A stretch of 64,000 bases of DNA, taken from contig NIVC01004011.1 in the NCBI GenBank assembly GCA_002269645.1, positions 756 through 64,755 on the forward strand. Direction: 5' to 3'. The stretch's first letter is position 1. Every line of letters starts with the position of its first letter. A model generated the notes under the pieces. The model saw nothing but the letters and a program-made list of their open reading frames with translations. It made no database searches and was not told the DNA's origin. Below, in pieces: positions 8,110 to 64,000 of this stretch. The translations under genes and the position numbers were made by a program. The stretch comes from Macrostomum lignano. Lineage: Eukaryota.

Positions 8110-8174
8110 CTGAAAGACGAACGAAGCAATATCGAGTTCACAATAAATATTAAATCATGGGCAAGCACGCTAAC

Positions 8175-9718
8175 CTTTGTGCGATTGAGCCGTTATCGGC
8201 TGGCAAAGAATCGCCAATACTAAGCGCTAGCTGGAGCAAATTGACCACGCGGCTGTTGCCGAATTCCTGAGCACATCGTAGAGCAGTTTGGATCGAGTCC
8301 AGCTTGCACTGGAGAATGGACTCACGGACTAGCAACTCAGCCACTTCGTAGCGGCCGTTTTGCGATGCAATGTAGAGAGGCGTCTTGCCTGTCTTAGCTT
8401 GAACATTGATGTCAGCTAGCGCTTTAATAAGTAATTCGACAGTCTTCAGGTGGCCACGGCACGATGCGATGTAGACAGGCGTGCGACCATCGGCTTGCTG
8501 ATGATTGACATCGACTCGAGCTCTAAGCAGCGATTCGAGCACTCCGGGATGGCCTTGCTGCGACGCGATGTACAGCGGCGACTCGCCACCGAATTTTCTA
8601 ATCGCGACATCGGCCTGGGCTTTAAGTAGCGAGTTCACAATCTTATGGTGCCCCCCATTTGAGGCTACGTAGAGAGGCGCTCGGCCACTTTGTTGCTGGA
8701 GATCAACGTTGGCTTGCGCTTTGATGAGCAGGTCAACCACCGATTGATGGCCCTCTAGCGATGCGATATAGAGAGGCGTCTCGCCCGAGTTCCGTTGAAT
8801 ATCAATGCTGGCTTGCGCTTGTAGAAGTGAATTAACAACTTTTGCATGGCCGTTGCTCGCTGCAATGTAGAGCGGCGAGTATCCATCCTCATCTTTAAAG
8901 TTGATATCCACCAGAGTCTGCACAAGAAAGTCTACCACTTTGTGATGCCCGTTATGAGAAGCAGCGTACAGAGGCGAGGTTCCGTCATCTGCAAGAATAT
9001 TAACGTCGGCTTGCGCTTCGATGAGTAAACGAACAACCTTGTGGTGACCGTTTTGCGATGCGATGTATACGGATGAGCAGCCGTCTTGTAGTTCTTGTAG
9101 ATTGACGTCAGCTCCTGCTTTGAGTAGCAAATCGACAACCTCGTAGTGGTCGTTCTGTGATGCAATATAGAGTGGCGATTCGCCTGTGTTCCTTGGAAGG
9201 TTGACATCGGCTCGGGCATCGATGAGTGAGCTCACCACACGGAGGTGTCCTTCCTGAGATGCTATGTAGAGAGGGGAGCAGCCAAGGACCGGCTCGCGAG
9301 CATTGACATCGGCCTGCGCTTTGATAAGCGACTTGACCACCTTGTCATGTCCGTTTAGACACGCTATGTAGAGAGGGGAGCAGCCATTTCCTTCCAGAAG
9401 ATTGACATCGGCTCCAGCTTCGATAAGTGAATCGACAATCTCGTGATGGCCTTGATGCGATGCGAGGCAAATCGCACTATCGCCTGCCTGATTTTGCCTA
9501 TTGATTTCTACTTTGGCTTGAATTAGCAGCAAAACAATGCCCTTGCTTCCGTAGTAGGAGGCCACCATTGCTGGGGTTGCTTTAGCAGACAACGCATCGA
9601 AATCGATGACATCCTCGGCAAGACTTCTCTTGGTGGCTAAAATTCCCTGGAACGCTTTGGTATCGTCGCCTTGAATGGCCGCTAGCAGCTGTTCGTCAGT
9701 GGGCGCAAGGGAGCTCAT
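8175..9718 (-). CDS. Exon 1 of ankyrin-repeat/cGAS-like receptor gene (~13-14 ankyrin repeats)
   Basis: Repeated (S/T)PLYIASxxGHxxVVxxLIxAxADVN. Donor CAAAG|GTTAGC; intron 8174-8110 (65 nt, phase 2). Confidence 0.9.
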
Positions 9719-12780: not shown

Positions 12781-13797
12781 TCCCTACTTTTTGATCCCTA
12801 TTCACTCACTATGATCCTTACTCTGTCACTATGATCCCTACTCACTCACTATGATCCCTACTCACTCACTATGATCCCTACTCTGTCACTATGATCCCTA
12901 CTCACTCACTATGATCCCTACTCACTCACTATGATCCCTACTCACTCACTATGATCCCTACTCTGTCACTATGATCCCTACTCACTCACTATGATCCCTA
13001 CTCTGTCACTATGATCCCTACTCACTCACTATGATCCCTACTCACTCACTATGATCCCTACTCTGTCACTATGATCCCTACTCACTCACTATGATCCCTA
13101 CTCACTCACTATGATCCCTACTCTGTCACTATGATCCCTACTCTGTCACTATGATCCCTACTCACTCACTATGATCCCTACTCACTCACTATGATCCCTA
13201 CTCTGTCACTATGATCCCTACTCTGTCACTATGATCCCTACTCACTCACTATGATCCCTACTCACTCACTATGATCCCTACTCACTCACTATGATCCCTA
13301 CTCACTCACTATGATCCCCTACTCATTCAATATGATCCCTACTCACTCACTATGATCCCCTACTCACTCACTATGATCCCCTACTCATTCACTATGATCC
13401 CTACTCACTCACTATGATCCCTACTCACTCACTATGATCCCCTACTCATTCAATATGATCCCTACTCACTCACTATGATCCCCTACTCACTCACTATGAT
13501 CCCCTACTCATTCACTATGATCCCTACTCACTCACTATGATCCCTACTCACTCACTATGATCCCTATTCACTCACTATGATCCTTACTCTGTCACTATGA
13601 TCCCTACTCACTCACTATGATCCCTATTCACTCACTATGATCCTTACTCTGTCACTATGATCCCTACTCACTCACTATGATCCCTACTCACTCACTATGA
13701 TCCCCTACTCATTCAATATGATCCCTACTCACCCACTATGATCCCTACTCACCCACTATGATCCCTACTCACTCACTATGATCCCTTAAACCTTACT
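12781..13797. repeat. Minisatellite, 20 bp (ATGATCCCTACTCACTCACT / ..CTCTGTCACT)
   Basis: Direct inspection; ends ~30 bp from the oxidoreductase stop codon. Confidence 0.95.
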
Positions 13798-13824
13798 ATG
13801 ACCCCCAGATTAACCAGGATCCCA

Positions 13825-15000: not shown

Positions 15001-15719
15001 ATGAAAGAATGAGATAGACAGCAATACAGAGTCTACAAGCTTGCAGACATTTGAACAGTGCTCACTAAAAGAAAGGAACTCAGAGAGAAGTTTCTTTCCC
15101 AACAGGCAGGGATGAACATGTACAGAGCGGACAGTGTTCGAATAATCTATGCAGAGGATTAGACCAGAAAGCAGGAGCGCAGCAAAGCTGATTGATTTTT
15201 ATCCTCTTACAATCCGGAAAAATCCCCCAACCCTAGCTCTCGAAGTCCTTCCCCGTGCTGCCATCCCATCTCCCTGCCCTAGCCGCATTTCCCTACTCGA
15301 AACTTCGAGCAGAATCGATGGGGCGGCACAGACTATCGAAAGATACATCAACGGAGGAAAAATTGGATGGGAGCTTACACTGCTGGCCTAGACTCAAAGG
15401 AATTAGGTCGATGGAGGAGATGGACGGCTTAAGCAAGCGATGTGTTGGGTTAGAAACTTTTTTATTAGCTGCTCAGATCGGCCAGACAGTTGGCTACAAA
15501 AACAACTGAAATTTCTCTCTAAGGATGGAATCCGCAAGCTGCCTGCACCGAATTTTAACATGCTTTGCTTTAAAGAAATTCACACAGACTGAAGTAGGCT
15601 AAGACCGCATCAATTAGACAAATTAGTTGAAAGTTATTTACTTCCTGAAAATTTCAACCATTTGCAAATACGTAGACCAGATTGTTCATTAAATAGTTTC
15701 AGAGACAGACCACAGGCAG

Positions 15720-16925
15720 ATAAGACACAAAGACCAGGGATAGATGAAGACACAAAGACCAGAGACAAGTCAAGACACAAAGACCAGAGACAAGTCAAGA
15801 CACAAAGATGAAGACACAAAGACCAGAGACAAATCAAGACACAAAGACCAGAGACAAATCAAAACACAAAGACCAAAGACAAGACAAATCAAGACACAAA
15901 GACCAGAGACAAGACAAATCAAGACACAAAGACCAGGGACAAGACAAATCAAAACACAAAGACCAGAGACAAGACAAATCAAGACACATAGACCAGGGAC
16001 AAGACAAATCAAAACACAAAGACCAGAGACAAGACAAATCAAGACACAAAGACCAGGGACAAGACAAATCAAAACACAAAGACCAGAGACAAGACAAATC
16101 AAGACACAAAGACCAGAGACAAGACAAATCAAGACACAAAGACCAGGGACAAGACAAATCAAAACACAAAGACCAGAGACAAGACAAATCAAGACACAAA
16201 GACCAGGGACAAGACAAATCAAAACACAAAGACCAGAGACAAGACAAATCAAGACACAAAGACCAGAGACAAGACAAATCAAGACACAAAGACCAGGGAC
16301 AAGACAAATCAAAACACAAAGACCAGGGACAAGACAAATCAAAACACAAAGACCAGAGACAAGACAAATCAAGACACAAAGACCAGGGACAAGACAAATC
16401 AAGACACAAAGACCAGAGACAAGACAAATCAAAACACAAAGACCAGAGACAAGACAAATCAAGACACAAAGACCAGGGACAAGACAAATCAAGACACAAA
16501 GACCAGAGACAAGACAAATCAAAACACAAAGACCAGAGACAAGACAAATCAAGACACAAAGACCAGGGACAAGACAAATCAAAACACAAAGACCAGAGAC
16601 AAGACAAATCAAGACACAAAGACCAGGGACAAGACAAATCAAAACACAAAGACCAGGGACAAGACAAATCAAAACACAAAGACCAGAGACAAGACAAATC
16701 AAGACACAAAGACCAGAGACAAGACAAATCAAGACACAAAGACCAGGGACAAGACAAATCAAGACACAAAGACAGGGACAAGACAAATCAAAACACAAAG
16801 ACCAGAGACAAGACAAATCAAGACACAAAGACCAGGGACAAGACAAATCAAAACACAAAGACCAGAGACAAGACAAATCAAGACACAAAGACCAGGGACA
16901 AGACAAATCAAGACACAAAGACCAC
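15720..16925. repeat. Intronic minisatellite, 30 bp (AAGACACAAAGACCAGAGACAAGACAAATC)
   Basis: Direct inspection. It explains the four 315-434 aa repetitive ORFs. Confidence 0.97.
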
Positions 16926-16959
16926 ACAGATGGAGCCAAAAGCTAGAAAAGTGCCGCAC

Positions 16960-21690: not shown

Positions 21691-22459
21691 AGCGTCTGAC
21701 ATCAATTTGGGATTCGTGCATGAAAATAAGCTAAGGGTTCATCGGTGCCATTCTCGCCAATGAGAGCCATCCTGACAGAGACTGTACATGTCTGACAGTT
21801 AGAAAGTCAGGGCTGCTGTACACACGTGTGAGCTTGCGTAGGTATCCGTGTGCATGCTCAAAGGTCAGCGAAATGCGGGGAAACAGTCGCTAAAGTGCTC
21901 AAAGCAGCTTCCTTCCTGCAATCTATAAACTAATTAACTAATAGAGGGATGACGGCAACTTGACCCACTCGCTCACTCGACTAATTAGCAAACTAGCATC
22001 AAAATATCAAAGCAAAAAAATCAATGCACTGCTTTCCCTGGATGGATGCATTAAACAACACTGTTTACAAAAGAAGATAAAAGCAGCTGACTGCATAGAG
22101 ACAAACATTGTAAGAAAAACAAGATAATAAAAGTTGTATAGATGGCTAGTCTGTCTCATTTAGCCGAGAAAAGGATCAAAGCAAGAATTAGTCTTTGTTG
22201 ATGCGAGAATATTTGTGGGCTACTGATAATTGATGATGAGGACTGAACACGGTTAGCCAAAAAAAGTTGTGACATTGTTACACCTTTCGATGCGCGCAAG
22301 GCTTTGAAATATGACCTCGCGGCGAGCCGTACGGTGACAGGGTAATTACAGATAGTAAATGATTTACTACTCAATACTATATAGGCTATAGCGCGTACTA
22401 CAGTGTTTTGCTACCTGCATAAGGCAGCTCAAGGATTTAATGAGCTACTTTCTAGCCTA

Positions 22460-23408
22460 GTATCAATCAGGTAGACTCTACTCCCTACTCTATCATAAAT
22501 CAGGTAGACTCTACTCCCTAACCTATCATAAATCAGGTAGACTCTACTCCCTAACCAGTCATCAATCAGGTAGACTCTACTCCCTACTCTACTATCAATC
22601 AGGTAGACTCTACTCCCTACTCTACTATCAATCAGGTAGACTCTACTCCTTACTCTACTGTCAATCAGGTAGACTCTACTCTCTACTCTACTATCAAACA
22701 GGTAGACTCTACTCCCTACTCTACTATCAAACAGGTAGACTCTACTCCCTACTCTACTATCAAACAGGTAGACTCTACTCCCTACTCTACTATCAAACAG
22801 GTAGACTCTACTCCCTACTCTACTATCAAACAGGTAGACTCTACTCCCTACTCTACTATCAAACAGGTAGACTCTACTCCCTACTCTACTATCAAACAGG
22901 TAGACTCTACTCCTTACTCTACTATCAAACAGGTAGACTCTACTCCCTACTCTACTATCAAACAGGTAGACTCTACTCCCTACTCTACTATCAAACAGGT
23001 AGACTCTACTCCCTACTCTACTATCAAACAGGTAGACTCTACTCCCTACTCTACTATCAATCAGGTAGACTCTACTCCTTACTCTACTATCAATCAGGTA
23101 GACTCTACTCCCTACTCTACTATCAATCAGGTAGACTCTACTCCCTACTCTACTATCAAACAGGTAGACTCTACTCCCTACTCTACTATCAATCAGGTAG
23201 ACTCTACTCCTTACTCTACTATCAATCAGGTAGACTCTACTCCCTACTCTACTATCAAACAGGTAGACTCTACTCCCTACTCTACTATCAATCAGGTAGA
23301 CTCTACTCCTTACTCTACTATCAATCAGGTAGACTCTACTCCCTACTCTACTATCAATCAGGTAGACTCTACTCCCTACTCTACTATCAATCAGGTAGAC
23401 TTTACTCC
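22460..23408. repeat. Intronic minisatellite, 33 bp (ACTCTACTCCCTACTCTACTATCAAACAGGTAG)
   Basis: Direct inspection. Confidence 0.95.
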
Positions 23409-23478
23409 TTCATCGCACAAAGGTCAGTCTCCAACCCCTACCAAATAGAGCGCAGACAGGAAGGCCCAAGCCACTCAC

Positions 23479-29407: not shown

Positions 29408-30292
29408 AGATTTTGGGAGATATTTGGATTAATGATTGTTGGGATTAGGGATATTTGGATTAATGATTGTTGGGATTAGGGATATTTGGATTAATGATTG
29501 TTGGGATTAGGGATATGTGGATCAGCGAATGTTGGGATTAGGGATATTTGGATTAGCGAATGTTGGGATTAGGGATATTTGGATTAATGATTGTTGGGAT
29601 TAGGGATATGTGGATCAGCGAATGTTGGGATTAGGGATATTTGGATTAGCGAATGTTGGGATTAGGGATATTTGGATTAGCGAATGTTGGGATTAGGGAT
29701 ATTTGGATTAGCGAATATTGGGATTAGGGATATTTGGATTAGCGAATGTTGGGATTAGGGATATTTAGATCAGCGAATATTGGAATTAGGGATATTTGGA
29801 TTAGCGAATGTTGGCATTAGGGATATTTGGATTAGCGAATGTTGGGATTAGGGATATTTGGATTAGCGAATGTTGGGATTAGGGATATTTGGATTAGCGA
29901 ATATTGGGATTAGGGATATTTGGATTAGCGAATGTTGGGATTAGGGATATTTGGATTAGCGAATATTGGGATTAGGGATATTTGGATTAGCGAATGTTGG
30001 CATTAGGGATATTTGGATTAGCGAATATTGGGATTAGGGATATTTGGATTAGCGAATGTTGGGATTAGGGATATTTGGATTAGCGAATATTGGGATTAGG
30101 GATATTTGGATTAGCGAATATTGGGATTAGGGATATTTGGATTAGCGAATATTGGGATTAGGGATATTTGGATTAGCGAATATTGGGATTAGGGATATTT
30201 GGATTAGCGAATGTTGGCATTAGGGATATTTGGATTAGCGAATGTTGGGATTAGGGATATTTGGATTAGCGAATACTGGGATTAGGGATATT
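29408..30292. repeat. Intronic minisatellite, 31 bp (GGGATATTTGGATTAGCGAATGTTGGGATTA)
   Basis: Direct inspection; fills ~90% of the intron. Confidence 0.95.
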
Positions 30293-31856: not shown

Positions 31857-33008
31857 CTAGAATAGCAATCTAGTGCGGCCCCTCTTCGGGGCGCCCAATA
31901 AGCAAGGAGCAAAAATAGTTTCTGGAAAACTATTAAAAAGCACATTTTCTTAAAAACAAATTCCTTCTTCACTTTTGAAAATCACCTTATTCGTGTAAAA
32001 TTGTCACGGACAAAGTTGTTTGCTATAAATCACTTTTTCTCTAAAATTAACAAACAGACAACAAAATATAGCTCCCCCTAAATAGAAAATATTCCCAAGA
32101 CAGCAAGCACCCCCTCCAAAAGTAAGCAACCGCAGATAGCAAGCATCCCCCAGATAGCAAGCATCCCCTAGATAGCAAGCACCCCCCAGATAGTAAGCAC
32201 CCCGGGCCCCCAGATAGCAAGTATCCCCTAGATAGCAAGCACCCCCCAGATAGTAAGCACCCCGGGCCCCCAGATAGCAAGTATCCCCTAGATAGCAAGC
32301 ACCCCCCAGATAGTAAGCACCCCGGGCCCCCAGATAGCAAGCATCCCCTAGATAGCAAGCACCCCCCAGATAGTAAGCACCCCGGGCCCCCAGATAGCAA
32401 GTATCCCCCAGATAGCAAGCATCCCCCAGATAGCAAGCATCTGCAGATAGCAAGCATCCCGTAGATAACAAGCATCTGCAGATAGCAAGCATCCCCCAGA
32501 TAGCAAGCATCACCCCAGATAGCAAGCATCCCCCACACAGCAAGCATCCCCCACACAGCAAGCATCCCCCACACAGCAAGCATCCCCCTGATAGCAAGCA
32601 TCTGCAGATAGCAAGCATCCCCCAGATAGCAAGCATCCCCCCGATAGCAAGCATCCCCCAGATAGCAAGCATCTGCAGATAGCAAGCATCCCCCAGATAG
32701 CAAGCATCCCCCCGATAGCAAGCATCCCCCAGATAGCAAGCATCCCCAGATAGCAAGCATCTGCAGATAGCAAGCATCCCCCAGATAGCAAGCATCCCCC
32801 AGATAGCAAGCATCTGCAGATAGCAAGCATCCCCCAGATAGCAAGCATCTGCAGATAGCAAGCATCCCCCAGATAGCAAGCATCCCCCAGATAGCAAGCA
32901 TCCCCCAGATAGCAAGCATCTGCAGATAGCAAGCATCCCCCAGATAGCAAGCATCCCCAAGATAGCAAGCATGTGCAGATAGCAAGCATCACCCCAGATA
33001 GCAAGCAT
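31857..33008 (-). mobile_element. Second, inverted copy of the Helitron-like minisatellite-bearing element
   Basis: Its reverse complement matches 600-843, including hairpin GCCCC-GAAGA-GGGGC (31878-31892) and terminal CTAG. Array spans 32100-33008. Confidence 0.55.
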
Positions 33009-36000
33009 CAGAAAAGTTTCTTGCTGGCGGTGATGATTCATTTGTTAACAGGCAAGAGAAAAATCAGAGGTAACCATGCAAAAATACTAAGAACAAGTTA
33101 ACAACTTTTATATCTGTATTTAAAGTGGCGATAGCACATGACAACAAGAAACTACCAAATGTTACTCACGCTAGTCCACAAAATACTTGGTTAGTAAAAA
33201 GACGAAGATAACTTATTCAGTTCGTAAAAAACTAATAGATTGGTTTGGTGAATTCATTGTGCCAGAGGCCCAGACTCGACTACAAGTAGGGTTGTCACAT
33301 CAATTCGGGGCTAAATTGGAATCTCGGCTTGGCTCTGCTTGTGCAATGAGCGCATTTGAGGGCCAACCCCCAGGGCACACTGAAGTGTACATGCCTAACG
33401 ATAAATAAAGTTACGGCCACTGTACACAGCTTGGACACAGGACAGCAAACCTGTTGTGTGACAAGTTCGCTTCAAGTGCGCCAGGGTGCACACAGCCCCG
33501 TCTCTAATAAAAAAAGTATCTCTGCATAATCATCAATACTCATGTGCTTTTATTCTATAACCTTAAGAATTACGTCTCATAGGTCACGCGGTGATGTTCA
33601 TTTTGTATCTTTATAACTTTGTTTCTCTATATGCTGCAGCTAATGTTTCATATAATAACTCATATGCACTAACATTGGTGCTGCACAGTATAAATAAAGA
33701 AGCCAAGCTACTGCTTTGAAATCCTGCATTATGGCAAGAGAAAAAACCCTGAATGACAAACATCATTGATCATAAGTATTTATCTGGAATCAAGAAATCT
33801 AAATTAGCTCGCCATATAGCATTAGATGTTTTTCTAGATCAGCAAAAACAACTGCTTGACTGATTTCTGGAATCTTTTAATAGCAATGACAGCATGCATC
33901 AGCAAGCAGGATTAATTAGTTGGCTGTTCAATTATAAATATGTCCGATTGTATCAGCGTTGCTACTGATAGTAGGCTGTGCAACATTCGAACTGTGCAAC
34001 ATTGCCACTTAATGCTAAGTAAGTCTTAATGAAGAGATTTGCCCAATCAAAACAGTTTGATAGAAAATGCATAGTTTTCTTGTAGGTTTTTATTTCTAAA
34101 TATACATATGTAAGCTATTAATTCAATGCATATTGCTTTGTCCTAAATCTTTTTATTAAGACTTACTAAGCATTGAGGGGCAATTTAGACAAAACCTGCC
34201 AAAATCAAAACAGAATCAAAAGCATTATAGCAAACATTGACAGAAAAAGCTCTGCAGGCAAATCTTGGTGGAAATCTCATGTGTACAAATATCAGTGGGC
34301 AATTCTTATGGACCAACTAATGAGTTTTTTTGAGGCTACTAAATGCAGGTGTATGCCTATGCCTATTCATATACTATGCATATATCTATACACTTGTATG
34401 CCTATTGCACCTACTAGAATAGAAAATAATGCATCTTTTAATTGTGATAATGCTGCTTGAAGTGCACTAGGATACACTTTGCCCCTGCTTCTAATGAAAG
34501 AAATACAAGTGTATATTAGTACACACTGCCTCTATCCAAAATGTATAGCTTGTATTTAGCTACATTTACTTTGCTTTCAAGAATTAACATATTATTCTTT
34601 GTTAATATAAAACACTTTAATCTAATACATTGACTAAATAATTTTATTTCTTGAAATTAACTTTGAAGGTTGACCAGATTGAAAGATATATATAAAAAAT
34701 TAAAAAGAAATATTGATCTTTTTAATATGAAATTGGACTTTTATTTATTTAATGGATTTCTCTAGTAACTTCTTAGATAAAATTCCAGGGTTCAACTTTG
34801 GGACTCAACTTCCATAGCTTCTTTTCCAATAGGAAAGTTGGATTTGTTACTTTATATAGGCCTATTAATAGTAAAACCTTTAAAATAAGCCTTTGCCAAA
34901 ACAGACTAGGCATTCTTTCATTATACAATTCCTACTATTTTACTATTTTGTTATACAATCCCTGTGCAGTTAGGCTATGTATTGCCATTGATTTGTTATA
35001 CATTCCCCATTAAAAAGTGAAGGTGAAATCAGTTTTAAGTTTATTGTACCACTTAAAATCATAGATATTGCAAAAGTATATTCATAAGAGGCCATACTAC
35101 ATATTCACTTTCATAATATGATCCCTTAAATATTAAATTCATTTGAAAATTGTATTGGAAGGAAGGATTTGAGAATAAAAATGAGGGGCTTTTGTTTTGC
35201 AATCATTCCAATGTTAGTTTTATATTTTATAGATTGTATTATCAAGGGTGATACAGTTGATTTGAACTAGTACATTCATTAGAATTGTGTAAATTGTATA
35301 TTCATAGTTAAAGCTACATACTACCCTCTCTTACTATCATTATAGAATCCCTTTAATGCTAATGAATACAGAATACATTAAATGGGTTAAATAACAAAAG
35401 TGAAAGAGGAGAGTAAAAAAGAAAGAAAAATAGGAGGTTTGAATTATTAAATAAAACAAATTGAGTAAGTTTTACTTTGCTGATTTTATCGCTGCAATTG
35501 TGGAAATTCAATACCTGCTATCTTTTTATAATACAATCCACACAATACAAAATTGCTATTGAAATGATTGAACAACAAACCTTCCCTTCTCACTTTTGTT
35601 ATCCAATCTTCCAACTTCATATAAAATGAATTTACCATTTGAGAGTGCATATTAAAAAAGTGAATATATTGTATGGCTTTTTGTTAAAGTGTACCAATAC
35701 ACTTTTGCAATATTCATGATTTTCACAACAATATTATAAAGTGAAAATTGGTGTTGGCTTGCCTTTCTTACAGGGGATTGTATAACAAAACATTGCAAAA
35801 AAGTGGATTGCCCCATTGGAAAAAGGTTACAAATTGTGTATCCCAAATCTGCTATATTTTTGGGAATATTTTGTGCCACACCACAGATTAAGGAAAAAAA
35901 TTGATGCTATACGCTGTGCAACCTAGAATCATAGAAAATTCATACTAGGCTTGAATTACTAGGAAGAAAAAGCCCAAAAGCTACAATTAGTCATTAACTT

Positions 36001-48783: not shown

Positions 48784-49054
48784 AGTAGTATAGAAAAAGA
48801 CGCTTCTAGACCCAGAGCACTTTTTTAATGACCGTTTTAAGGGTCTAGAGGGGGGACACGGGGGGTAAATAAAAAAACACATCTAAACACCCTTAACACA
48901 TCTAAACACCCATAATCACCCACAACCCCCCTTAATACCAAAAAAGCAATATAACCCACCCCCAACACCCCCCTCGCGTCCCCCCTCTTAAGACCTTACA
49001 AACGGCCATTAAAATAAGGTCTGATCTGTAAGCGTCTTTTTCTATACTACTACT
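48784..49054. repeat. Polinton terminus forming an internal long inverted repeat
   Basis: Perfect 22-bp IR AGTAGTATAGAAAAAGACGCTT (48784-48805) / AAGCGTCTTTTTCTATACTACT (49030-49051), extended inward by an imperfect arm of ~60 bp. Confidence 0.85.
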
Positions 49055-49674: not shown

Positions 49675-50823
49675 TTAGTTCGCAGACATTATCTGGTTCT
49701 CATAAAAAGAACCCAATATTTCTTCACCATCCTTATCAGCAATTATATAGGTTGTAGGATTTGTATTTAAAACTTTACTGATGGTAAATTTCTCACTTAT
49801 TTTCCAATATCCTTTTCTTCCCTTTTCAAACTTATCTTTCCATTTATAGATATAAACAGAATCACCAACCTTAAAACCTTTAGTTTTCTTTTTTTCAAAA
49901 TCTCCAAAAGTAACCCTAACATTTTCAGGATTGTTATAAGCTTGTTGAGGAGTCATCTTTATCGCCGAATGATATGAATTGTTATAATCTTTCACTACGT
50001 CTGGTAATATTTTTACCCACTTTTGGTTACCATTAAGACTAAACTGAAACCATAATTTCTTACCTAAAGTTCGATTAAATCTTTCTATTAATGCGTTTTT
50101 ACTCTCTCCATAAATAGAATAAATTTTATTAATATACTCCCCATTCGCGTCTTTTTTCCTTTCTTTTCCTTTTTCAAAATGATACAATTTATACATGTGA
50201 GGATTGTAAAATTCTTTTCCTTCGTCAACACACAACCTTTCACTTTTTTCTCCAAGACTTCTAAAAGCAGCAGCAACCTCCTCTCCCTTTTTGGATTTTA
50301 AAGGAACAGCCCACGCGTATCGAGTAAAACCATCTAATATGGTTAAGATATATTTATATCCTCTTTCGTTCGGCATCGACATTAAATCAGCATACCAAAT
50401 TTCATTCTTTTTGAAGTTCATGATTTTTCTATAAAATTTAGGTTTTCGATATTCTTTATGAAGAATCTTTGCCTCATCAGAACTTAACCCGCCGCCACTT
50501 AACAACAAACACTCAACACAATTATTTCCATGTTGATTATAATTAATTCCCAAACCAAATTTAACTTTAGACTGCAAGATCTTTTTAACCATCCACCTAG
50601 TTAATTTTTGACCTACCGATAATCCCTGCAAGTTATCTAATCCTTGAATCATTTTTTGATCGGCTTCATGTTTTAATCTTAATGCTTCCTCGGGCGGGTT
50701 CTTGTCAGCATCTCTATATGCTAAGTCGTGATAGTATGCTAACCAATCAATCCCATTTATTGGAATTGAATCAGATTTTGGAGTATTGTCAGGATTTAAT
50801 CTCAAATCTAAGCGAGTGCCGGG
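49675..50823 (-). CDS. int: Exon 2 of PLA2-like domain + retroviral-type (rve) integrase fusion; spliced product 435 aa
   Basis: PGTRLDLRLNPD..IDWLAYYHDLAY..ADQKM (parvoviral-type PLA2 HD motif), then the DDE integrase WYADL, VDEGKEF, IERFNRTL. Confidence 0.9.
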   Translation of the reverse strand, partial: PGTRLDLRLNPDNTPKSDSIPINGIDWLAYYHDLAYRDADKNPPEEALRLKHEADQKMIQGLDNLQGLSVGQKLTRWMVKKILQSKVKFGLGINYNQHGNNCVECLLLSGGGLSSDEAKILHKEYRKPKFYRKIMNFKKNEIWYADLMSMPNERGYKYILTILDGFTRYAWAVPLKSKKGEEVAAAFRSLGEKSERLCVDEGKEFYNPHMYKLYHFEKGKERKKDANGEYINKIYSIYGESKNALIERFNRTLGKKLWFQFSLNGNQKWVKILPDVVKDYNNSYHSAIKMTPQQAYNNPENVRVTFGDFEKKKTKGFKVGDSVYIYKWKDKFEKGRKGYWKISEKFTISKVLNTNPTTYIIADKDGEEILGSFYENQIMSAN

Positions 50824-51126
50824 TAGTTTACCCTCAATCTTTCGAAAGAGGCTGGAGCACACCTTAAGCGGCGATAATTACCGCCCATCTCCGTCTGCTC
50901 TCTGAACCTTCTCCTTATATTTAAAATACTTAGGAGCTTGGCTGCGCATTGCCACCATGTCTTCAAGCTTGTTACCTTTGGGAAGAGGAGTTACCTCTGT
51001 TCCTTCAAAAGATTTCTCAATTGAAGTGGTACTTGAAGCTGTATGACGGGTTTCACGCAATTTGGAGACATCGCCACTAATAGTGACTAGCAGTAGCTTT
51101 GCTTCTACCACTCAGGCCACGGGATA
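50824..51126 (-). ncRNA. Group I self-splicing intron (IC1-like), 303 nt, no internal ORF
   Basis: P1 CAGGU/GCCUG with U.G at the 5' splice site; P3 UGUCUCC/GGAGAUG; P4 UGCG/CGCA within AAAUUGCG and GCAGCCAAG; P5abc with A-rich bulge and GAAA loop; P6a CUCCU/AGGAG; P7 G(A)GAGCA/UGCUCC; P8 and P9 hairpins. Removal restores MNFTG|PGTRL. Confidence 0.92.
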
Positions 51127-51285
51127 ACCTGTGAAGTTCATTGATGGCAGGTGTAGCTCACCCGTATACCTCCCAGTAGTAAATATTGGTGGTAAGCTTG
51201 TTAATCCTTTTTGTAAGTCTAAAAATCCTCCTTCAAATACTAATTGGTCGAACCTTCGGTTCGCATGCGTCGCATGATTGCTCAT
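51127..51285 (-). CDS. Exon 1 of the PLA2-like/integrase gene (53 codons)
   Basis: TAAAAATG start. MSNH..EGGFLDLQKGL..GELHLPSMNFTG matches the N-terminal half of the Polinton PLA2-like domain. Confidence 0.88.
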
Positions 51286-51835
51286 TTTTAATAGCCTTAA
51301 AAATACATGATAGCACCAATTGTTTTGCAAACTCTTCAATGGTTGGTTGTTTAACTTTTTTATAGTTATTATCTACGCTAGTTAAGTATCTTTTATTTGT
51401 CCAATGTTCAGACTTTTTCATCTGATCTTCATCTTTGTAACTAAACGAAGAAGCGGAAATGAAATGATCAATATCTAAATTTCCAGTATAATCTTTTGAA
51501 ACATAATATTTTCTTGTGAAATTTAACCAATCAAAAAAGAATTCTTTTGTGCAATCAAGATATGAGATATAGTCCTTGTCATTAAAATTTTTCAACGCCC
51601 AATTTATTCTATTTCTAATTAAAACAATATGTTTGTAATTATCATCATTGTGATACTTGTTTTTTCTATATTCATTAAATTTATCTTTATTGTTTTTCAT
51701 CCAAATAGTAGATGAGGTATTATGACAAGATCGACAATCATTTCTAAATTTTTTTGAATCATTTCTCCAAAAATAAAATTCTTTCGTCATTGGTTTTTCT
51801 TGTTTACACTTAATACAAATCTTTTTAGGTTCCAT
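51233..51835 (-). CDS. Free-standing HNH endonuclease (NCLDV-type) with N-terminal zinc finger
   Basis: CIKC..CRSC zinc motif. IDHFISASSF..EHWTNKRYL..DNNYK resembles the IDHIxPxxxF..HYTNLQPL..DNxxK consensus of large DNA virus HNH nucleases. Confidence 0.72.
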   Translation of the reverse strand: MEPKKICIKCKQEKPMTKEFYFWRNDSKKFRNDCRSCHNTSSTIWMKNNKDKFNEYRKNKYHNDDNYKHIVLIRNRINWALKNFNDKDYISYLDCTKEFFFDWLNFTRKYYVSKDYTGNLDIDHFISASSFSYKDEDQMKKSEHWTNKRYLTSVDNNYKKVKQPTIEEFAKQLVLSCIFKAIKNEQSCDACEPKVRPISI

Positions 51836-52568: not shown

Positions 52569-54038
52569 ATGGCTGAAACAAAAACTATGTGGAGTGATAA
52601 ATTTCATTTCAAAAAGCACCGACAGTATATTAATGAGGTCAGAGCAAGAGATTTAAATTATACCCTACCAACAAGTGATAATTCAAATAACTTTACTACT
52701 GGAACGGTAACTTTTGACATCGGCGCAACCAACACTATATTGGATATGAAAAATGCGTTTTTCCGCGTTAGATGGTTGTATACTAGAAATGATGGAACTG
52801 CTCTTGCAGCCGGAGATATCGCAGATCGATCCGGAATAATAATAGAAAATGATTGGTTTTATAAATGTTTTTCCCAAGCTCAACTAACTGTTAATGGTGC
52901 TGAGGTTGAGACATCATCAAACCCCGCAGAGATTAATGGAGTTTTAAAACATTTAAATTATACTTATTTATCAAAACAAGTTGGTGATAATGTTGGGTGG
53001 ATGCCGGATAAAGGTAACGGTCAAGCAGTAGTTTTCCCTAATGTACAAAACGCAGCCGGTGCAGATACTGCAGCGCTAATTGTTTACCTTAATACAAACA
53101 TAGTTCCAGTTGTAACCACTATGACTAATACAAAAGATATTAATACTGGTTTTATAGATCGTCAGAAAAATTCCCAGTCGCGGTTTTAACCACAGCAACA
53201 GCATATGAGCAGGACTTTTCAATCTTCCCGCTATTTGGGTTCTTCTCACCAAATCGGGTATGGAAAGGATTAAAATTTGGGATACAGTTGCAAATATCTG
53301 GTGGATATCAGCCTAGGATACTTTATGGAACCTCAATTTCAACCGATATAGCAGTTCGTATAGATTCAATTCAATTAGTCGTACCAACTATTGAGGTAAC
53401 AGCCCCACTTTTAAAACACATCGATAATCAGTTAACGCATGATCAGGAAATATTTTATTTGAATCGTAGACACTTTATGCGAACCATTAATAACAATCAG
53501 GATTCATTCCAGTGGCAAATACTGACATCAAAACGTCGGGTGAGATATATTTTTGTTTGGTTTAAATAACAAACAGAAGGAGTAAAAGAGCAAATGGGGA
53601 TTTATATTGGCTTCAATCCGGTGCCATAGCAGAACAAGCAGCCACCGCAACAGACAATGCGGCTGCAGCTATTAACGAGTTTAATGTTCAGAATATCCGC
53701 CTGCAGGTTGATGATCAATATTATCCGGTTAAAGACCCCTAAATTTAAATATAGCAAATAATAATGTTAATGATTTTATAAAATATTATCAAGATTATGC
53801 TAAAAATGAAGCGTATGCCGTCCCTCAGTACACACCCACAGAGTTTCTAAACATTCATCCAGTGGTTGTTTATGATCTAACGGCACAGAAAGAAAACGTA
53901 GCCAATATTGGACTTAATTATATGTTAGAGATTAATAAAACTGGTAATCAGGCACTTGACGCCCACGTATTGTTTCTAGAGGAATATATGTCAATTGCTA
54001 AAGCTGATGGCACGATTGTTCGGGACGCCCCGCTGTAA
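52569..54038 (+). CDS. Major capsid protein (double jelly-roll), with ~3-4 frameshifts in this sequence
   Basis: Segments join across 1-bp shifts: FSQAQLTVNGAEVE..; FPLFGFF..VWKGLKFGIQL; LNRRHF..RYIFVWF; NIRLQVDDQYYP; FLNIHPVVVYDLTAQKE..TAA at 54036-54038. Confidence 0.85.
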
Positions 54039-60657: not shown

Positions 60658-63600
60658 TTATCCGATAAGTAATTTTTCTGTTAATCTCTTCCAGTTATTC
60701 AAGACTTTTTCCTTATTTAATTTTTTAAGTTCTTTTGGAAATGTTGAATAATAATTATCTATATCTTTTTCATATTCTAGAAATGTATTATATTCACAAT
60801 CACATTCGGATTCACAATCACAATCGTAATAATAATTATTTATTGCCGCTTTGTATTCATTATATTTACTTATTATATCTTCTTTTTGTTTTTTATCTTT
60901 TATCATATTTTTTATCTCTTCTTTTAAACCATATGGATATGTTTTAATTTTATCATCTAAATATCTTTTATCATCAAATGGACTTAATGTTTTTTTATCT
61001 GTCTCGATGACAAACATCTGATGCTTATCTGAATTTAATCGATATTGTGGAGCATGATAATTTTCAATTGTATTAAGGTAATCTAAAAGTACGTTTTTAT
61101 AATCATCAAATGTTATCTTTTTTACTGCTGCTCTTGATACCCCTTTTATTTTTTTTACCTCTCCCTCCTGTCCTAAAACCTTAAATGCATAGCATTTTGA
61201 TCTTATTGCTATAAACTCGGTTATGATTTTGCTATTTAATTCATCTTTCATTTTAAGTACAACTTTTTTATTTTGATCTGATTTTAAAGGATGGTTATCC
61301 GGATAGTCGGAGGTATCCATGTATCCTTAATTTTTTCCATATCTTTATAGACATCGAACCTTTGGTTCGTGGGCTTTGCCCGATCTCTGTTTCAACCTTA
61401 AATACCAAACTGTCGGTGTCTGCATATATTGGATAGTTATCTGGCCATGTTTTATTTATAACATCATAATAGTATTCATACATTACCAGCTTTGCATAAT
61501 CTAAAACAACCATTCCAATAAATATTGGTTTAAGAAATTTTGTTGTTTTATTTCTCATATGAATACCCATAAAGTTATCATCAAATTTTATAAAGTCTTT
61601 AAAGTTAGGTTTTGAGAAATATTTCTTTGCTTTATCAATATCCTTTTCTAAATGGAATTGGGTTCTATCTCTAATATTTTCAACCGTTTTTCCATAAAAA
61701 GCATTATTCATTAATTTCCAATAATCTTTCTCAAAATTTGTTTTTGACATCTGTCTCTGATTTGAATTAAAGTCAATATATTTAGCTAACCAATCTTCCT
61801 CAATAAACGATATTGTTCGATGTACTTTAGACACTTTTAATCCCTGCTTTTCATAAAATTGTAGAAGCTTATAATGCACTACATAGTTTTTCTTATCATG
61901 TAAATTTAATATTAATTTTTTTGTTGCTAGATGTTTTGCATTATCTACTTTAAGATAATCTTTTTGTGTTTGTGATAAATCATCTTCATTAACTGAACAA
62001 TGCTCTGGAGCTAAAGGATATTTATATGTTTTTGCTTTTGCTTCCCGAGTATATTGCAAATCCACTTCTACGATACAGCCCCTTCCTTCGGGAATATTTT
62101 TGTAATAATCGGGGTCATCTTCCCATTGGAAATCAGCTATTGGTAATTTTTGTTTCATACAACCACCGTATAAATTGTTTGCATCTAGATATAATACATA
62201 TGATGATTTTTCTTTTTTATTATAATTTGGAAGATATTATTATTTACTTTAGTATATCTATCTCCTAGTACACCCGAGAATCCGCCGCGAATTCCTCTCT
62301 CAATCATTAACAACATATCATGATCAGTTAGTAAATCAATCTTAACATCTGTATGTTTCAAACCACAAGCCCATGTTAATCCGGTGCACTGAAACAATAT
62401 GCGGGATCAATTTTAAAATTCTCATATGTATGATTCCTAAAGTTTTCAAATGCATCAGCTAATAGGAGAACATCTGCTTTAAGATATAGATTATGATAAT
62501 CTTTAAATGTTTTACAATTAAAGTATTTCCATACTTTTTGAGCGTGTTCATAATCCGATTCACTTATGTTTGTTTGTGATAATGTTGAATAAAACTTTTC
62601 AATTGGGGTAATTCGGTATGAAAAAATACGTCTTCAGATGTTACATATTCATATGGATAGATGCCCTTACGAGTTAATAGCATTAGTTCTTCCTCGGATA
62701 GTTTTTCTTTTTTGAAACGATTCAATAGTATTGGAAAGTTTTTCTTTACTATTTCTAAATCCCATGGTTTTGGAACTAATGATGAAACAACATTTGCTAA
62801 AGATGTTGATAAGAATCTCAAGGAATCTAGAAAAACTAGATGGGAGTATTTCTTACCATATGTTATTGATATGTAATTTTCTGATGTTTTAGGTAATATA
62901 TTTATTTCATATTCATCCTTTCCTAAATGAAGCAATTCTCGAACTAAGAAATGAAAATCATATCCGGAACCATTATGAAAAAATACTGGTATTTCCTTAC
63001 ATCCTTTTCCTTCTTTTGCATTACATGATCTACATGCTGCCCCTCGATAATTTCCTGTTAGATGACAATGTTCTCGTATCTTATTATTCTTACTTAAATG
63101 TCTTTTGCACATAAAACAATTTGTTGCATTTTTATAATTGTCTCTATCCTTATTTGTCATATTAATATTTTTTGATAATTTATCATATTGATTTTGAATA
63201 TATTCAAATACATTTACTAATGATTCTGCCATGTGCTTAGCTGCATCATTACCGTGGTAAGTAATCATCCTTGATTTAAATATATGATCAGCTACAGAGT
63301 GTACATATATACAATAACTATTCGAAACTGTGTTGTAATTTTTTTGTGCATTCACGTCATCATGATACCGTCTGTGATTCTTTTAAGGAACATTTGTTGC
63401 TTCAAAATCAGCATATATTACTATTGGTTTTTTAACTGCCATATAATGTTGTTGTTGGAACTTTAGGGTTGCATCTTCAGATGCTGGCATTATAGCATTA
63501 GTAAATTTTGTGATCTAAACAAAATCGTTGGTGGTTTTTAAGAGCTGTTTCATCCTTTTTAAATGTAAAACAATTTCTACATAGTGGATATCTATTTCTA

Positions 63601-64000
63601 TTTCTCTTAAAAAAGAACTAATATCTTTTATGTATATATAATGTGTTTCATTTTCGCGCTGCATGTACAAAGATCGATTTGATCTGGTGCTGTATATCAG
63701 TTGCTGGCTTAACAAGATAACATTTTCTTATACCATTCTGGATCGACTGCTGAATTTCTTCTAGATCTTTTGGTTCTTCATTGTAAAAACATTAATATTT
63801 AAACCATTCATTTTTTCAATCTTATATATATCATCTATTGCTACTGGGTATGGATATGTTTTTCATTATTTTTCATCCTCATATTGTCTATAATTATATA
63901 TTTTATTAATGTGTGATTCTACTTGATTGTGATATTTATGAATTAATAAACACCATAATAAACATTTATTATCTTTATTGTCTGGATTTATAATCATAGG
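60658..64000 (-). CDS. polB: Protein-primed family B DNA polymerase (pPolB); 5' part beyond the window, multiple frameshifts
   Basis: Endonuclease-VII-like REHCHLTGNYRGAAC..CN; exonuclease FFHNGSGYDFHF; RGGFSGV; YLDANNLYG; KLMNNAFYGKT; YADTDS; SPFDDKRY. Confidence 0.95.

What the first reader, a model, noticed from the sequence alone, without database searches (positions are those of the whole stretch)
50824..50925. Non-canonical catalytic core: compensated P7 (GAGCA/UGCUC) and apparent omega-A
The near-invariant P7 GACUA/UAGUC is replaced by GAGCA/UGCUC. Both changes are compensatory, the G264-C311-equivalent guanosine-binding pair is intact, and J8/7 reads AAGGUG instead of AAGAUA. This argues for a selected, functional variant and would let sequence-motif searches miss it. 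The reading frame and P10 place the 3' splice site at ..GGUAAACUA|CCCGGC, so the last intron base is A, not the canonical omega-G. A natural omega-A intron is known (Coxiella 23S intron Cbu.L1917) but is very rare. Caveat: this element has many 1-bp indels, so a dropped terminal G could be an assembly error or decay.
Basis: partly seen in the sequence, partly recalled or inferred. Interest (0 to 1): 0.72.

Follow-up and report, generated by a model that had tools for sequence, protein, structure and literature searches.

The report
Group I intron with variant core
A real self-splicing (group I) intron interrupts the phospholipase-integrase gene of a virus-like Maverick/Polinton element in a flatworm-like genome; its odd catalytic helix is a compensated trait shared with relatives, but its unusual last base (A instead of G) occurs only in this copy and probably impairs splicing.

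Summary
Window 51126..50824 (minus strand, 303 nt, no ORF) is a Tetrahymena-like group I intron. It scores 59.8 bits against Rfam RF00028 (threshold 50), every helix P1-P10 is intact, and 26 pairs show compensatory changes across relatives.

It splits the Ca-loop codons (NFTG|PGT) of a PLA2-like/rve-integrase gene in a Polinton/Maverick-like element beside Macrostomum-like host genes.

- **P7 variant.** P7 is G(A)GAGCA/UGCUCC with J8/7 AAGGUG, and the G-C guanosine-binding pair is kept. The same variant occurs in same-site introns L071 and L072 and in viral contig L068-series locus L168. L011 carries the intermediate GAGUA/UACUC, and L073, L075 and L001 carry canonical GACUA/UAGUC. In 118 introns of this class, the last J8/7 base is A with C-G at 266:309 (99/99) and G with G at 266 (19/19). 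This fits a switch of the known A306-C266-G309 base triple. The variant is selected, not decay, and it is not what hides the intron from Rfam.

- **Omega-A.** The position is pinned by reading frame, P10 and a covarying P9.0. All six relatives have G, with no indel. Omega-A is therefore a private G-to-A substitution, not a family trait and not a dropped G. No change in the G-binding pocket accompanies it. It most likely impairs exon ligation; a tolerated variant or a base-call error cannot be excluded.

The parts
50824..51126 (-). Group I intron, 303 nt, ORF-less, Tetrahymena-like architecture (P1, P2, P2.1, P3-P9, P5abc-type extension).
   Evidence: Rfam RF00028 59.8 bits, E 6.6e-15. All helices canonical. 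Covariation across 7 sequences.
51127..51285 (-). Exon 1 of the PLA2-like/integrase gene (53 codons, ATG 51285-51283, ends ..AAC UUC ACA GGU = NFTG). The last U (51127) forms the G.U wobble of P1.
   Evidence: Alignment with intron-less homologues P0001, P0003-P0009. P1 pairing.
49675..50823 (-). Exon 2: rest of the PLA2-like domain (PGTRLD...HDLAY) plus the rve integrase, open to the stop codon.
   Evidence: Homologues.
51113..51131 (-). P1 hairpin. Exon CAGGU plus intron UAU pairs with the internal guide GUGGCCUG. The guide bases at 51122-51118 can instead pair with exon 2 (50823-50819) as P10.
   Evidence: Rfam alignment. P10 covaries with L071 (G-C to U-A), read.
50896..50902 (-). P7 5' strand G(A)GAGCA. 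50902 is equivalent to position 262, 50901 to the bulged A263, 50900 to G264 (guanosine-binding), and 50898/50897 are the two changed bases (C266 to G, U267 to C).
   Evidence: P7 100% paired; two pairs change on both sides.
50860..50865 (-). J8/7 AAGGUG. The last base (50860, equivalent to A306) is G.
   Evidence: this base is G in 19/19 introns with G at 266 and A in 99/99 with C at 266. The Tetrahymena triple A306-C266-G309 is described in PMC10020454.
50854..50859 (-). P7 3' strand UGCUCC. 50855 is equivalent to C311.
50870..50885 (-). P8, a short GC-rich hairpin (GGCGG/UCGCC). It is about 15 nt shorter than in the relatives but perfectly paired.
50825..50853 (-). P9.0 (AG 50853-50852 with CU 50826-50825) enclosing P9 (50851-50832), a hairpin with a GAAA tetraloop.
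   Evidence: P9.0 covaries across relatives: AG/CU, GA/UC, AU/AU, AC/GU.
50824..50824 (-). Omega position, the last intron base: A here, G in all six homologous introns.
   Evidence: aligned column..
51233..51835 (-). Free-standing HNH endonuclease ORF (200 aa) between the upstream gene and exon 1. It is a likely homing endonuclease partner of the intron.
   Evidence: PHROG endonuclease VII/HNH hits. 35% identity, E 2e-34, to the ORF inside the same-site intron of L075. Absent from the intron-less relative L002.

Best explanation
**What it is.** This is a genuine IC1-like (Tetrahymena-type) group I ribozyme intron. It is inserted between the Gly and Pro codons of the Ca-binding loop (..FTG|PGT..) of a PLA2-like/rve-integrase gene. 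The gene belongs to a Polinton/Maverick-like element lying next to Macrostomum-like flatworm genes.

**The P7 variant.** The unusual P7 is a coordinated, selected re-wiring of one layer of the guanosine-binding 'base-triple sandwich'. The triple A306-C266-G309 has become G-G-C, and the neighbouring U267-A308 pair has become C-G. The G264-C311 pair that reads the guanosine is untouched, as are the bulged A and the A265-U310 layer. The ribozyme should therefore still bind G and carry out the first splicing step normally (inferred).

**The omega-A.** The last intron base is held at the active site by P9.0 (CU/AG) and P10. In this copy it is A because of a single G-to-A substitution that no relative shares. 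The binding pocket still specifies G, so the second step (exon ligation) is expected to be much slower or to fail (inferred from established ribozyme biochemistry). This copy would then make little or no spliced PLA2-integrase mRNA.

**Mobility.** The neighbouring free-standing HNH gene is homologous to an intron-encoded one in a relative. It probably drives, or once drove, homing of the intron into intron-less alleles (inferred).
For: **Intron identity**
- Rfam scores 59.8 bits, above the gathering score of 50.
- All 82 proposed pairs are canonical in the window.
- 26 pairs have compensatory changes, and 0 of 500 shuffles reach the observed values.

**Junction**
- Intron-less homologues read NFTGPGT across it.
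- The PLA2 Pfam hit is restored only after splicing.

**P7 as a lineage trait**
- L071 and L072 share GAGCA/UGCUC.
- L011 has GAGUA/UACUC.
- L073, L075 and L001 have the canonical form.
- L168 carries the same variant in an unrelated context.

**Triple switch**
- Position 306 tracks position 266 without exception in 118 introns.
- The triple itself is seen in cryo-EM structures (PMC10020454).

**Omega**
- G in six of six relatives, which represent four lineages, and A only in the window, with no indel in the aligned tail.
- P9.0 covaries and abuts omega in every member.
- The core around the G site is identical to that of L072, so there is no compensating change.

**Context**
- Pfam hits to rve, Pox_A32 and DNA_pol_B_2.
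- Major capsid protein (MCP) homologues.
- Host genes 95% identical to Macrostomum lignano proteins.
- HNH homology E 2e-34.
Against: - No reads, transcripts or second genomic copy could be examined, so splicing competence is inferred, not shown.
- The rest of the intron shows no decay at all. Every helix is intact, and lineage-specific changes in P3, P4 and P8 preserve pairing.
- The 435-codon host ORF keeps all family-invariant residues.
- The element's frameshifts look like assembly artefacts.
- The element may therefore be young and under recent selection, which makes a random hit on exactly this base a priori unlikely. That leaves room for a tolerated omega-A.
- A natural omega-A intron that still splices is on record in Coxiella 23S rRNA (title cited; the paper itself was not readable here).
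Confidence: 0.55

Rival explanations
1. Omega-A is a real, tolerated feature of a still-functional intron. Tethering of the 3' splice site by P9.0 and P10 lets A occupy the G site well enough for slow but sufficient exon ligation. This might throttle integrase/PLA2 expression, as reported for the Coxiella 23S intron that lacks omega-G.
For: - The intron is otherwise pristine, and lineage-specific changes preserve pairing.
- The host ORF is intact, with all invariant residues.
- The neighbouring HNH ORF is intact.
- The element's frameshifts are homopolymer shortfalls typical of assembly error, so the copy may be young and active.
- There is a precedent for a natural intron without omega-G (reference title seen).
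Against: - None of six relatives has A, including L071 and L072, which are 79-85% identical in the core.
- No accompanying change occurs in the G-binding pair or its neighbours.
- From my own knowledge of the Tetrahymena literature, changing omega-G to A strongly inhibits exon ligation unless G264-C311 is changed as well.
Confidence: 0.25
2. Omega-A is an assembly or base-calling error. The true genome has G at 50824 and the intron is fully canonical at its 3' end.
For: - The locus clearly has consensus errors or lesions: three 1-base homopolymer shortfalls in the major capsid protein (MCP) gene.
- The polymerase gene is split into six or more colinear ORFs.
- All relatives have G.
Against: - The errors seen are all homopolymer deletions.
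- 50824 is not in a homopolymer, and the difference is a substitution in a stretch that aligns without gaps to L071/L072.
- Substitution errors are much rarer than indels in long-read consensus sequences (general knowledge).
Confidence: 0.17
3. The whole element, variant P7 included, is a dead relic. The P7 changes are decay and the ribozyme core is inactive.
For: - The element is integrated in host DNA.
- Several of its genes are frameshifted as assembled.
- Default Rfam scans miss the intron.
Against: - The P7 variant is shared by independent metagenomic relatives. It is fully compensated and is accompanied by the matching J8/7 change in 19/19 cases.
- All helices are intact.
- Rfam scores the intron above threshold when its filters are relaxed.
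Confidence: 0.03

Closest known systems
Tetrahymena thermophila LSU rRNA intron (subgroup IC1) and Rfam family RF00028 (Intron_gpI)
   Same: - The same helix set, with a P5abc-type extension, P2 and P2.1.
- The conserved strings AAAUUGCG (J3/4-P4), GCAGCCAAG (P4-P6), GUUCAGAGA (J6/7-P7) and UAAG..U (J8/7).
- A bulged A in P7, a G-C guanosine-binding pair, P9.0 next to omega, and a GAAA L9 loop.
- A Rfam score above the gathering threshold.
   Different: - It sits in a protein-coding gene of a virus-like element, not in rDNA.
- Position 262:312 is G-C (a trait of this whole viral class) instead of C-G.
- Positions 266:309 and 267:308 are swapped to G-C and C-G, with G at 306.
- Omega is A.
- The subgroup assignment rests on my recollection of the Tetrahymena sequence and on Rfam, not on a formal subgroup classifier.
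Same-class introns in giant-virus and phage contigs (IMG/VR), e.g. those in the RNA polymerase NADFDGDEMN motif
   Same: - They share the P4-P6-P7 core strings.
- 15 of them carry the half-way variant GAGUA/UA(C/U)UC with J8/7 AAGGUG.
- They target codons of a catalytic motif.
   Different: - Different host genes and insertion sites.
- Only L168 has the full GAGCA/UGCUC variant.
- Their omega bases were not determined here.
Coxiella burnetii 23S rRNA intron lacking omega-G (Raghavan et al. 2007, J Bacteriol 189:6572; title seen)
   Same: A natural group I intron whose last base is not G.
   Different: There the non-G omega is reported as a feature of the species' intron. Here relatives at the same site all have G, so the A is private to one copy, and its splicing has not been tested. 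Details of the Coxiella case are from memory, because the paper could not be opened.
Free-standing homing endonuclease plus ORF-less intron ('collaborative homing'; Bonocora & Shub 2009, cited)
   Same: An ORF-less intron sits about 110 nt downstream of a free-standing HNH gene. A homologue of that gene lies inside the same-site intron in another element. Intron-less and HNH-less alleles exist.
   Different: Described in phages, whereas here it occurs in a eukaryotic Polinton/Maverick-like element. The endonuclease target was not tested.
Group I introns reported in polinton-like viruses of protists (PMC12220804)
   Same: RF00028-type introns inside PLV genomes.
   Different: Those lie in a short gene upstream of the major capsid protein (MCP) gene in cryptophyte, Paulinella and Desmodesmus PLVs. 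This one lies in the PLA2-integrase gene of an element integrated in an animal-like genome. The default Rfam scan I ran on 64 kb missed it.

Membership tests
Group I intron (Rfam RF00028) | Covariance-model score at or above the curated gathering score. | tested here: met
   59.8 bits against 50, E 6.6e-15, full model 1-253. It was missed in the 64-kb and 4-kb scans because of the speed filters.
Group I intron (Rfam RF00028) | P1 formed by the 5' exon and an internal guide, with U.G wobble at the 5' splice site. | tested here: met
   CAGGU/GCCUG with U(51127).G. The U.G pair is conserved in 4/4 full-length relatives (helix 1).
Group I intron (Rfam RF00028) | Conserved core P3-P8 including the P3/P7 pseudoknot, supported by covariation. 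| tested here: met
   P3, P4, P5a, P6, P6a and P7 are 100% paired across sequences. 26 pairs change on both sides. Slid controls pair at 35-53% against 88%.
Group I intron (Rfam RF00028) | G-C guanosine-binding pair in P7 next to a bulged nucleotide. | tested here: met
   G50900-C50855 with bulged A50901. Invariant in 6/6 sequences (helix 14).
Group I intron (Rfam RF00028) | Terminal guanosine (omega-G) at the 3' splice site. | tested here: not met
   A at 50824. G in L001, L011, L071, L072, L073 and L075. This is a near-universal feature rather than a formal criterion, so the failure concerns this copy's activity, not its ancestry.
Group I intron (Rfam RF00028) | P9.0 and P10 define the 3' splice site. 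| tested here: met
   P9.0 is AG/CU, adjacent to omega, and covaries in relatives. P10 pairs 4 of 5, with one covarying pair against L071.
Group I intron (Rfam RF00028) | Self-splicing activity. | not testable with these tools
   Needs in vitro transcription and splicing, or RNA data.
Subgroup IC1 (Tetrahymena-like) | P5abc-type extension, P2/P2.1, L9 GNRA loop, and no P7.1/7.2. | tested here: inconclusive
   The helices P5a, P5b, P5c, P2, P2.1 and the GAAA L9 loop are present. No subgroup classifier or reference alignment was available, so the assignment relies on remembered similarity to the Tetrahymena intron.
Natural omega-A introns (Coxiella type) | Non-G omega conserved among copies or relatives of the intron. 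| tested here: not met
   Six of six relatives have G. No other copy from the same genome could be found.
Natural omega-A introns (Coxiella type) | Demonstrated splicing despite the non-G omega. | not testable with these tools
   No RNA or biochemical data.
Mobile intron with homing endonuclease | Endonuclease gene within or beside the intron, with intron-plus and intron-minus alleles of the same site. | tested here: met
   An HNH ORF is adjacent. It is homologous to the intronic ORF of L075. L002 and dozens of metagenome loci lack the intron, and six loci carry it.
Mobile intron with homing endonuclease | The endonuclease cleaves the intron-less target site. | not testable with these tools
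   Needs a biochemical assay.
Polinton/Maverick-like element | Protein-primed PolB, rve integrase, A32-type packaging ATPase and jelly-roll capsid protein in one element. | tested here: met
   Pfam hits to DNA_pol_B_2, rve and Pox_A32. The capsid-gene homologue P0162 is colinear. Relatives L073 and L075 carry a DJR capsid domain. The window's capsid fold and the element's terminal repeats were not examined.

The most novel reading that the evidence does not exclude
A naturally omega-A group I intron that still splices, in a protein-coding gene of a Maverick/Polinton-like virus resident in an animal (flatworm) nuclear genome. Its re-wired guanosine-pocket layer (a G-G-C triple) would make it a natural experiment on how strictly the G site reads the 3' terminal base. 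Its slow second step might act as a brake on integrase/PLA2 expression.
Probability: 0.2. Interest if true: 0.75.

Novelty: new member of a known kind. Interest (0 to 1): 0.45.

Why it matters
- **A natural test of a structural feature.** The P7/J8-7 result is a clean natural confirmation that the fourth layer of the guanosine-binding base-triple sandwich (A306-C266-G309 in Tetrahymena) evolves as a unit. It supplies an alternative triple (G with G-C) that could be tested structurally.
- **A new intron family.** The intron family itself seems undescribed. It is a homing-type group I intron at the catalytic Ca-loop codons of the PLA2-integrase gene of Polinton/Maverick-like elements. Different endonuclease genes sit inside or beside it in different members, and one member lies in animal-like nuclear DNA. 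A review abstract seen here (PMC3679873) states that all known nuclear group I introns lie in rRNA genes.
- **A practical point for genome scans.** Default Rfam scans of long sequences missed this intron and a canonical relative, although both score above threshold.
- **The omega-A.** Until reads or RNA are examined, it is best treated as a private lesion that probably silences this copy's integrase.

Tried and rejected
I first assumed the 5' exon was the 223-aa upstream ORF and that the HNH ORF lay inside the intron. My first protein search therefore used a wrong chimeric query. Homologues showed that the true exon 1 is 51285-51127 and that the intron has no ORF.
- **Alternative 3' splice sites at nearby G residues.** All give stops or frameshifts, or destroy the conserved FTGPG loop (worked out).
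- **Spliceosomal intron.** The boundaries are UA...UA, not GU...AG.
- **Dropped terminal G.** Rejected by the gap-free alignment with L071/L072.
- **Other copies in the window.** None found.
- **Other copies of the element elsewhere.** Exact-protein look-ups of the HNH and ATPase ORFs found nothing on record. IMG/VR has almost none of these elements, and a P9-specific DNA pattern gave only a chance hit, L193.
- **L074.** This copy has a deletion across the site and is uninformative.
- **Counting independent switches.** Clustering the 118 introns at 80% identity merged most of them into one cluster. The 19/19 and 99/99 counts are therefore not phylogenetically independent. I can only say that the G-type occurs in at least three insertion contexts.
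- **Papers not available.** The Coxiella papers could not be opened.

Full report
**1. What is at the coordinates**

The feature lies on the minus strand. Read 5' to 3', the sequence from 50925 to 50824 runs through these elements in order:
- the 3' strand of P6 and J6/7 (..AAGGUUCA);
- the P7 5' strand G(A)GAGCA (50902-50896);
- the P3 3' strand GGAGAU (50892-50887);
- a short P8 hairpin (50885-50870);
- J8/7 AAGGUG (50865-50860);
- the P7 3' strand UGCUCC (50859-50854);
- P9.0 and P9 (50853-50825);
- the last base, A (50824), followed by CCCGGC.

**2. Gene and splice sites**

My first query wrongly joined the 223-aa upstream ORF to the downstream ORF. The homologues it returned corrected this. 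They read ..GGDIQK..LP..KY.GE.HLPGHNFTGPGTRLDLRLNPDN.. without interruption.

The first part of that sequence is encoded at 51285-51127 in the window (..LDLQKGLTSLPPIFTTGRYTGELHLPSMNFTG). The second part starts at 50823 (PGTRLDLRLNPDNTPKSD..). This gives:
- exon 1 = 51285..51127;
- intron = 51126..50824 (303 nt, no ORF);
- exon 2 = 50823..49675.

The spliced 435-aa product aligns end to end with its homologues. It hits Pfam PF08398 (PLA2-like) at 28.6 bits across the junction, plus rve. The unspliced ORF reaches only 16.2 bits, below the 23.9 cut-off.

The intron therefore splits the Gly|Pro codons of the Ca-binding loop of a PLA2-like domain fused to a retroviral-type integrase.

**3. Is it a group I intron?**

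Rfam found nothing in the 64-kb scan or in a 4-kb scan at E up to 10. When only 50790-51160 was given, RF00028 matched 51136..50833 over the full model at 59.8 bits (gathering score 50, E 6.6e-15).

A hand-built structure has 82 pairs, all canonical in the window. It comprises P1, P2, P2.1, P3, P4, P5, P5a/b/c, P6, P6a, P7, P8, P9.0 and P9 with a GAAA loop. The MFE fold recovers most of it.

The 5' splice site has the U.G wobble (U51127 with the G of GCCUG). P10 can form between intron CCGUG (51122-51118) and exon 2 CCCGG, pairing 4 of 5.

**4. Relatives**

A second protein search with the spliced product returned proteins that begin MCSSLFRKIEGELPGT... These are gene calls that start inside a homologous intron. 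Fetching their contigs and others gave six introns at exactly the same codon junction:

| Locus | Extent | ORF in intron | P7 | Omega |
|---|---|---|---|---|
| L071 | full | PD-(D/E)XK-like (weak Eco47II hit), in the P2.1 loop | GAGCA/UGCUC | G |
| L072 | 3' part | not seen | GAGCA/UGCUC | G |
| L073 | full | none | canonical | G |
| L075 | full | HNH, in the P2.1 loop | canonical | G |
| L011 | 3' part | not seen | GAGUA/UACUC | G |
| L001 | last 53 nt | not seen | canonical (3' strand only) | G |

L002 and dozens of metagenome loci have no intron at this site.

On the seven-sequence alignment A2 I found:
- 88.3% of pair cells are standard, against 35-53% when partners are slid;
- 26 pairs change on both sides;
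- no shuffle in 500 reaches the observed values.

RNAalifold independently finds P6, P7 and P8. The intron core is 79% identical between the window and L071, although the host proteins are only 59% identical.

**5. The P7 variant**

Within this one insertion-site family, all three states occur: GACUA/UAGUC, GAGUA/UACUC and GAGCA/UGCUC. P7 is always fully paired (helix 14: two pairs with changes on both sides, 100% paired).

To see how unusual the variant is, I scanned IMG/VR for the flanking core strings GCAGCCAA..AAGGTTCAGAGA. That pattern does not constrain the next bases. Among 118 distinct introns (including the family and the window), the P7 forms were:
- GACUA/UAGUC: 94;
- GAGUA/UA(C/U)UC: 15;
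- GACUU/AAGUC: 4;
- GAGCA/UGCUC: 4 (window, L071, L072 and the unrelated viral contig L168);
- GAUCA/UGAUC: 1.

'Near-invariant' therefore overstates the case. The full variant is rare, and a half-way form is common.

The last J8/7 base was A in all 99 introns with C at the 266-equivalent and G in all 19 with G there. Cryo-EM work on the Tetrahymena ribozyme describes the G-binding site as four stacked triples: A263-C262-G312, omegaG-G264-C311, A261-A265-U310 and A306-C266-G309 (PMC10020454).

The variant is therefore a concerted replacement of the fourth layer (A with C-G becomes G with G-C), plus a swap of the next pair. The guanosine-reading layer is untouched.

One caveat applies. The 118 sequences are related, so these counts are not independent events. 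The G-type is nevertheless seen in at least three contexts: the PLA2 site, the giant-virus RNA polymerase site and L168.

The variant does not explain the Rfam misses:
- L071, which has the variant, was found in a 12-kb scan at 65.3 bits.
- L073, which has a canonical P7, was missed in that scan and was found at 64.6 bits only when scanned alone.

**6. Omega**

Three independent lines place the 3' splice site between 50824 and 50823.

- **Reading frame.** The frame and the conserved NFTG|PGT junction fit only this site.
- **P10.** It covaries: the window G7-C(+3) pair corresponds to U6-A(+3) in L071.
- **P9.0.** The two bases just before omega pair with the two bases just after P7. These are AG/CU in the window, L071 and L072; GA/UC in L011; AU/AU in L073 and L075; and AC/GU in L001.

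In every relative the base after P9.0 is G. In the window it is A.

The tail aligns without gaps (GAGGGAGAACUG| in L071/L072 against GAGGGUAAACUA| in the window). The difference is therefore a G-to-A substitution, not a lost G.

Nearby G residues cannot serve as alternative 3' splice sites without creating stops or destroying the FTGPG loop.

The P7 and J8/7 strands that form the G site (G(A)GAGCA, AAGGUG, UGCUCC) are the same in the window and in L072, which has omega-G. No compensating change exists. From the Tetrahymena literature as I recall it (Michel et al. 1989; Been and Perrotta 1991; Price and Cech 1988), omega-A with a G-C binding pair strongly inhibits exon ligation but leaves the first step intact.

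**7. Decay, error or tolerated variant?**

The element as assembled has many frame breaks.

- **Major capsid protein (MCP) gene (52569-54038).** It is colinear with a 486-aa homologue but needs three frame changes. Each is a one-base shortfall in a homopolymer: A5, A3 and C4.
- **Polymerase gene.** It is split into at least six colinear ORFs.
- **Host genes.** The flanking genes are 95% identical to Macrostomum lignano proteins.

The pattern of indels is what long-read consensus errors look like. Several things are intact:
- the integrase ORF, with all family-invariant residues;
- the HNH ORF;
- every intron helix.

The copy may therefore be young. That cuts both ways. A substitution at a non-homopolymer base is unlikely to be an assembly error. 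A random decay hit on exactly this base is also a priori unlikely, and so is a functional omega-A lineage.

My estimates:
- real private substitution that impairs splicing: about 0.55;
- real and tolerated: about 0.25;
- base-call error: about 0.17.

**8. Wider anatomy**

The HNH ORF (51835..51233) sits between the stop of the upstream gene (51863) and exon 1. The intron-less relative L002 has only 6 nt there. The ORF is 35% identical (E 2e-34) to the ORF inside the L075 intron.

The family thus shows an ORF-less intron, an intron with an HNH gene, an intron with a different nuclease gene, and an ORF-less intron with a free-standing HNH gene next to it. This resembles the phage cases discussed as steps in the origin of mobile introns (Bonocora and Shub 2009, cited).

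The surrounding element has PolB, A32-type ATPase, capsid and integrase genes. It is of the Polinton/Maverick kind.

Literature searches found:
- group I introns reported in protist polinton-like viruses from Rfam scans (PMC12220804);
- nothing about this gene or about animal-resident elements.

**9. Verdict**

The 'selected compensated P7' reading is supported and extended to a base-triple switch. Omega-A is real in the sequence but private to this copy, and it is most simply a lesion.

The intron is a new member, and an apparently undescribed insertion-site family, of a well-known kind.

Noticed in passing
window 51233-51835 (-): A free-standing HNH endonuclease ORF lies just upstream of exon 1. 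It is homologous (35% identity, E 2e-34) to the HNH ORF inside the same-site intron of L075. L071 carries a different, PD-(D/E)XK-like ORF in the same P2.1 loop, and L073 carries none.
   Followed up: partly
window 52569-54038 (+): The major capsid gene is colinear with the 486-aa homologue P0162 but needs three frame changes. Each is a one-base shortfall in a homopolymer (A5 near 53165, A3 near 53563, C4 near 53737). This looks like long-read assembly error rather than decay.
   Followed up: yes
window 60658-63997 (-): The protein-primed DNA polymerase B gene is broken into at least six colinear ORFs. Its N-terminal part contains an Endonuclease_7 (HNH-like) insert (PF02945). The gene runs off the end of the window.
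   Followed up: partly
window 6216-9718 (-): The host flank encodes ankyrin-repeat and Mab-21-domain proteins that are 95% identical to a Macrostomum lignano protein, with many 45-60% paralogues in that species. The window therefore comes from that flatworm or a very close relative.
   Followed up: yes
window 1-64000; L073: Rfam cmscan at default or 4-kb scope misses this intron and the canonical-P7 relative L073. Both score about 60-65 bits (threshold 50) when a stretch of about 380 nt is scanned alone. This is a filter false negative worth knowing about for genome scans.
   Followed up: yes
L079, L085, L087, L096, L122, L131, L137, L139, L159, L166 and others (IMG/VR): Same-class group I introns sit in or beside the NADFDGDEMN catalytic motif of RNA polymerase genes in giant-virus-like contigs. 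These carry the P7 variant GAGUA/UA(C/U)UC with J8/7 AAGGUG.
   Followed up: partly
L168:4330-4480 (IMG/VR): An unrelated viral contig with several group I introns carries one with exactly the window's P7 and J8/7 (GAGCA, AAGGUG, UGCUC). Its host gene was not identified.
   Followed up: no
L074:1240-1330: In this relative the region from ..LPGFIW to GTRLD.. is deleted, removing the intron site and the Ca-loop. It appears to be a degraded copy.
   Followed up: no
window 12790-13810, 15700-16930, 22440-23410, 29420-30290, 32150-33010: Long tandem-repeat arrays with about 90-96% self-similarity lie in the host part of the window.
   Followed up: no
window 48784-48836 and 49001-49051: A short inverted repeat (85% over about 54 nt) lies near where the AT-rich element begins. 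It may mark the element's end or a terminal repeat.
   Followed up: no
window 51240-51275 (-): A GC-rich palindromic stretch (..CAUGCGACGCAUGCGAACCGAAGGUUCG..) lies at the overlap of the HNH ORF's 3' end and the start of exon 1. It may be a terminator or regulatory hairpin.
   Followed up: no
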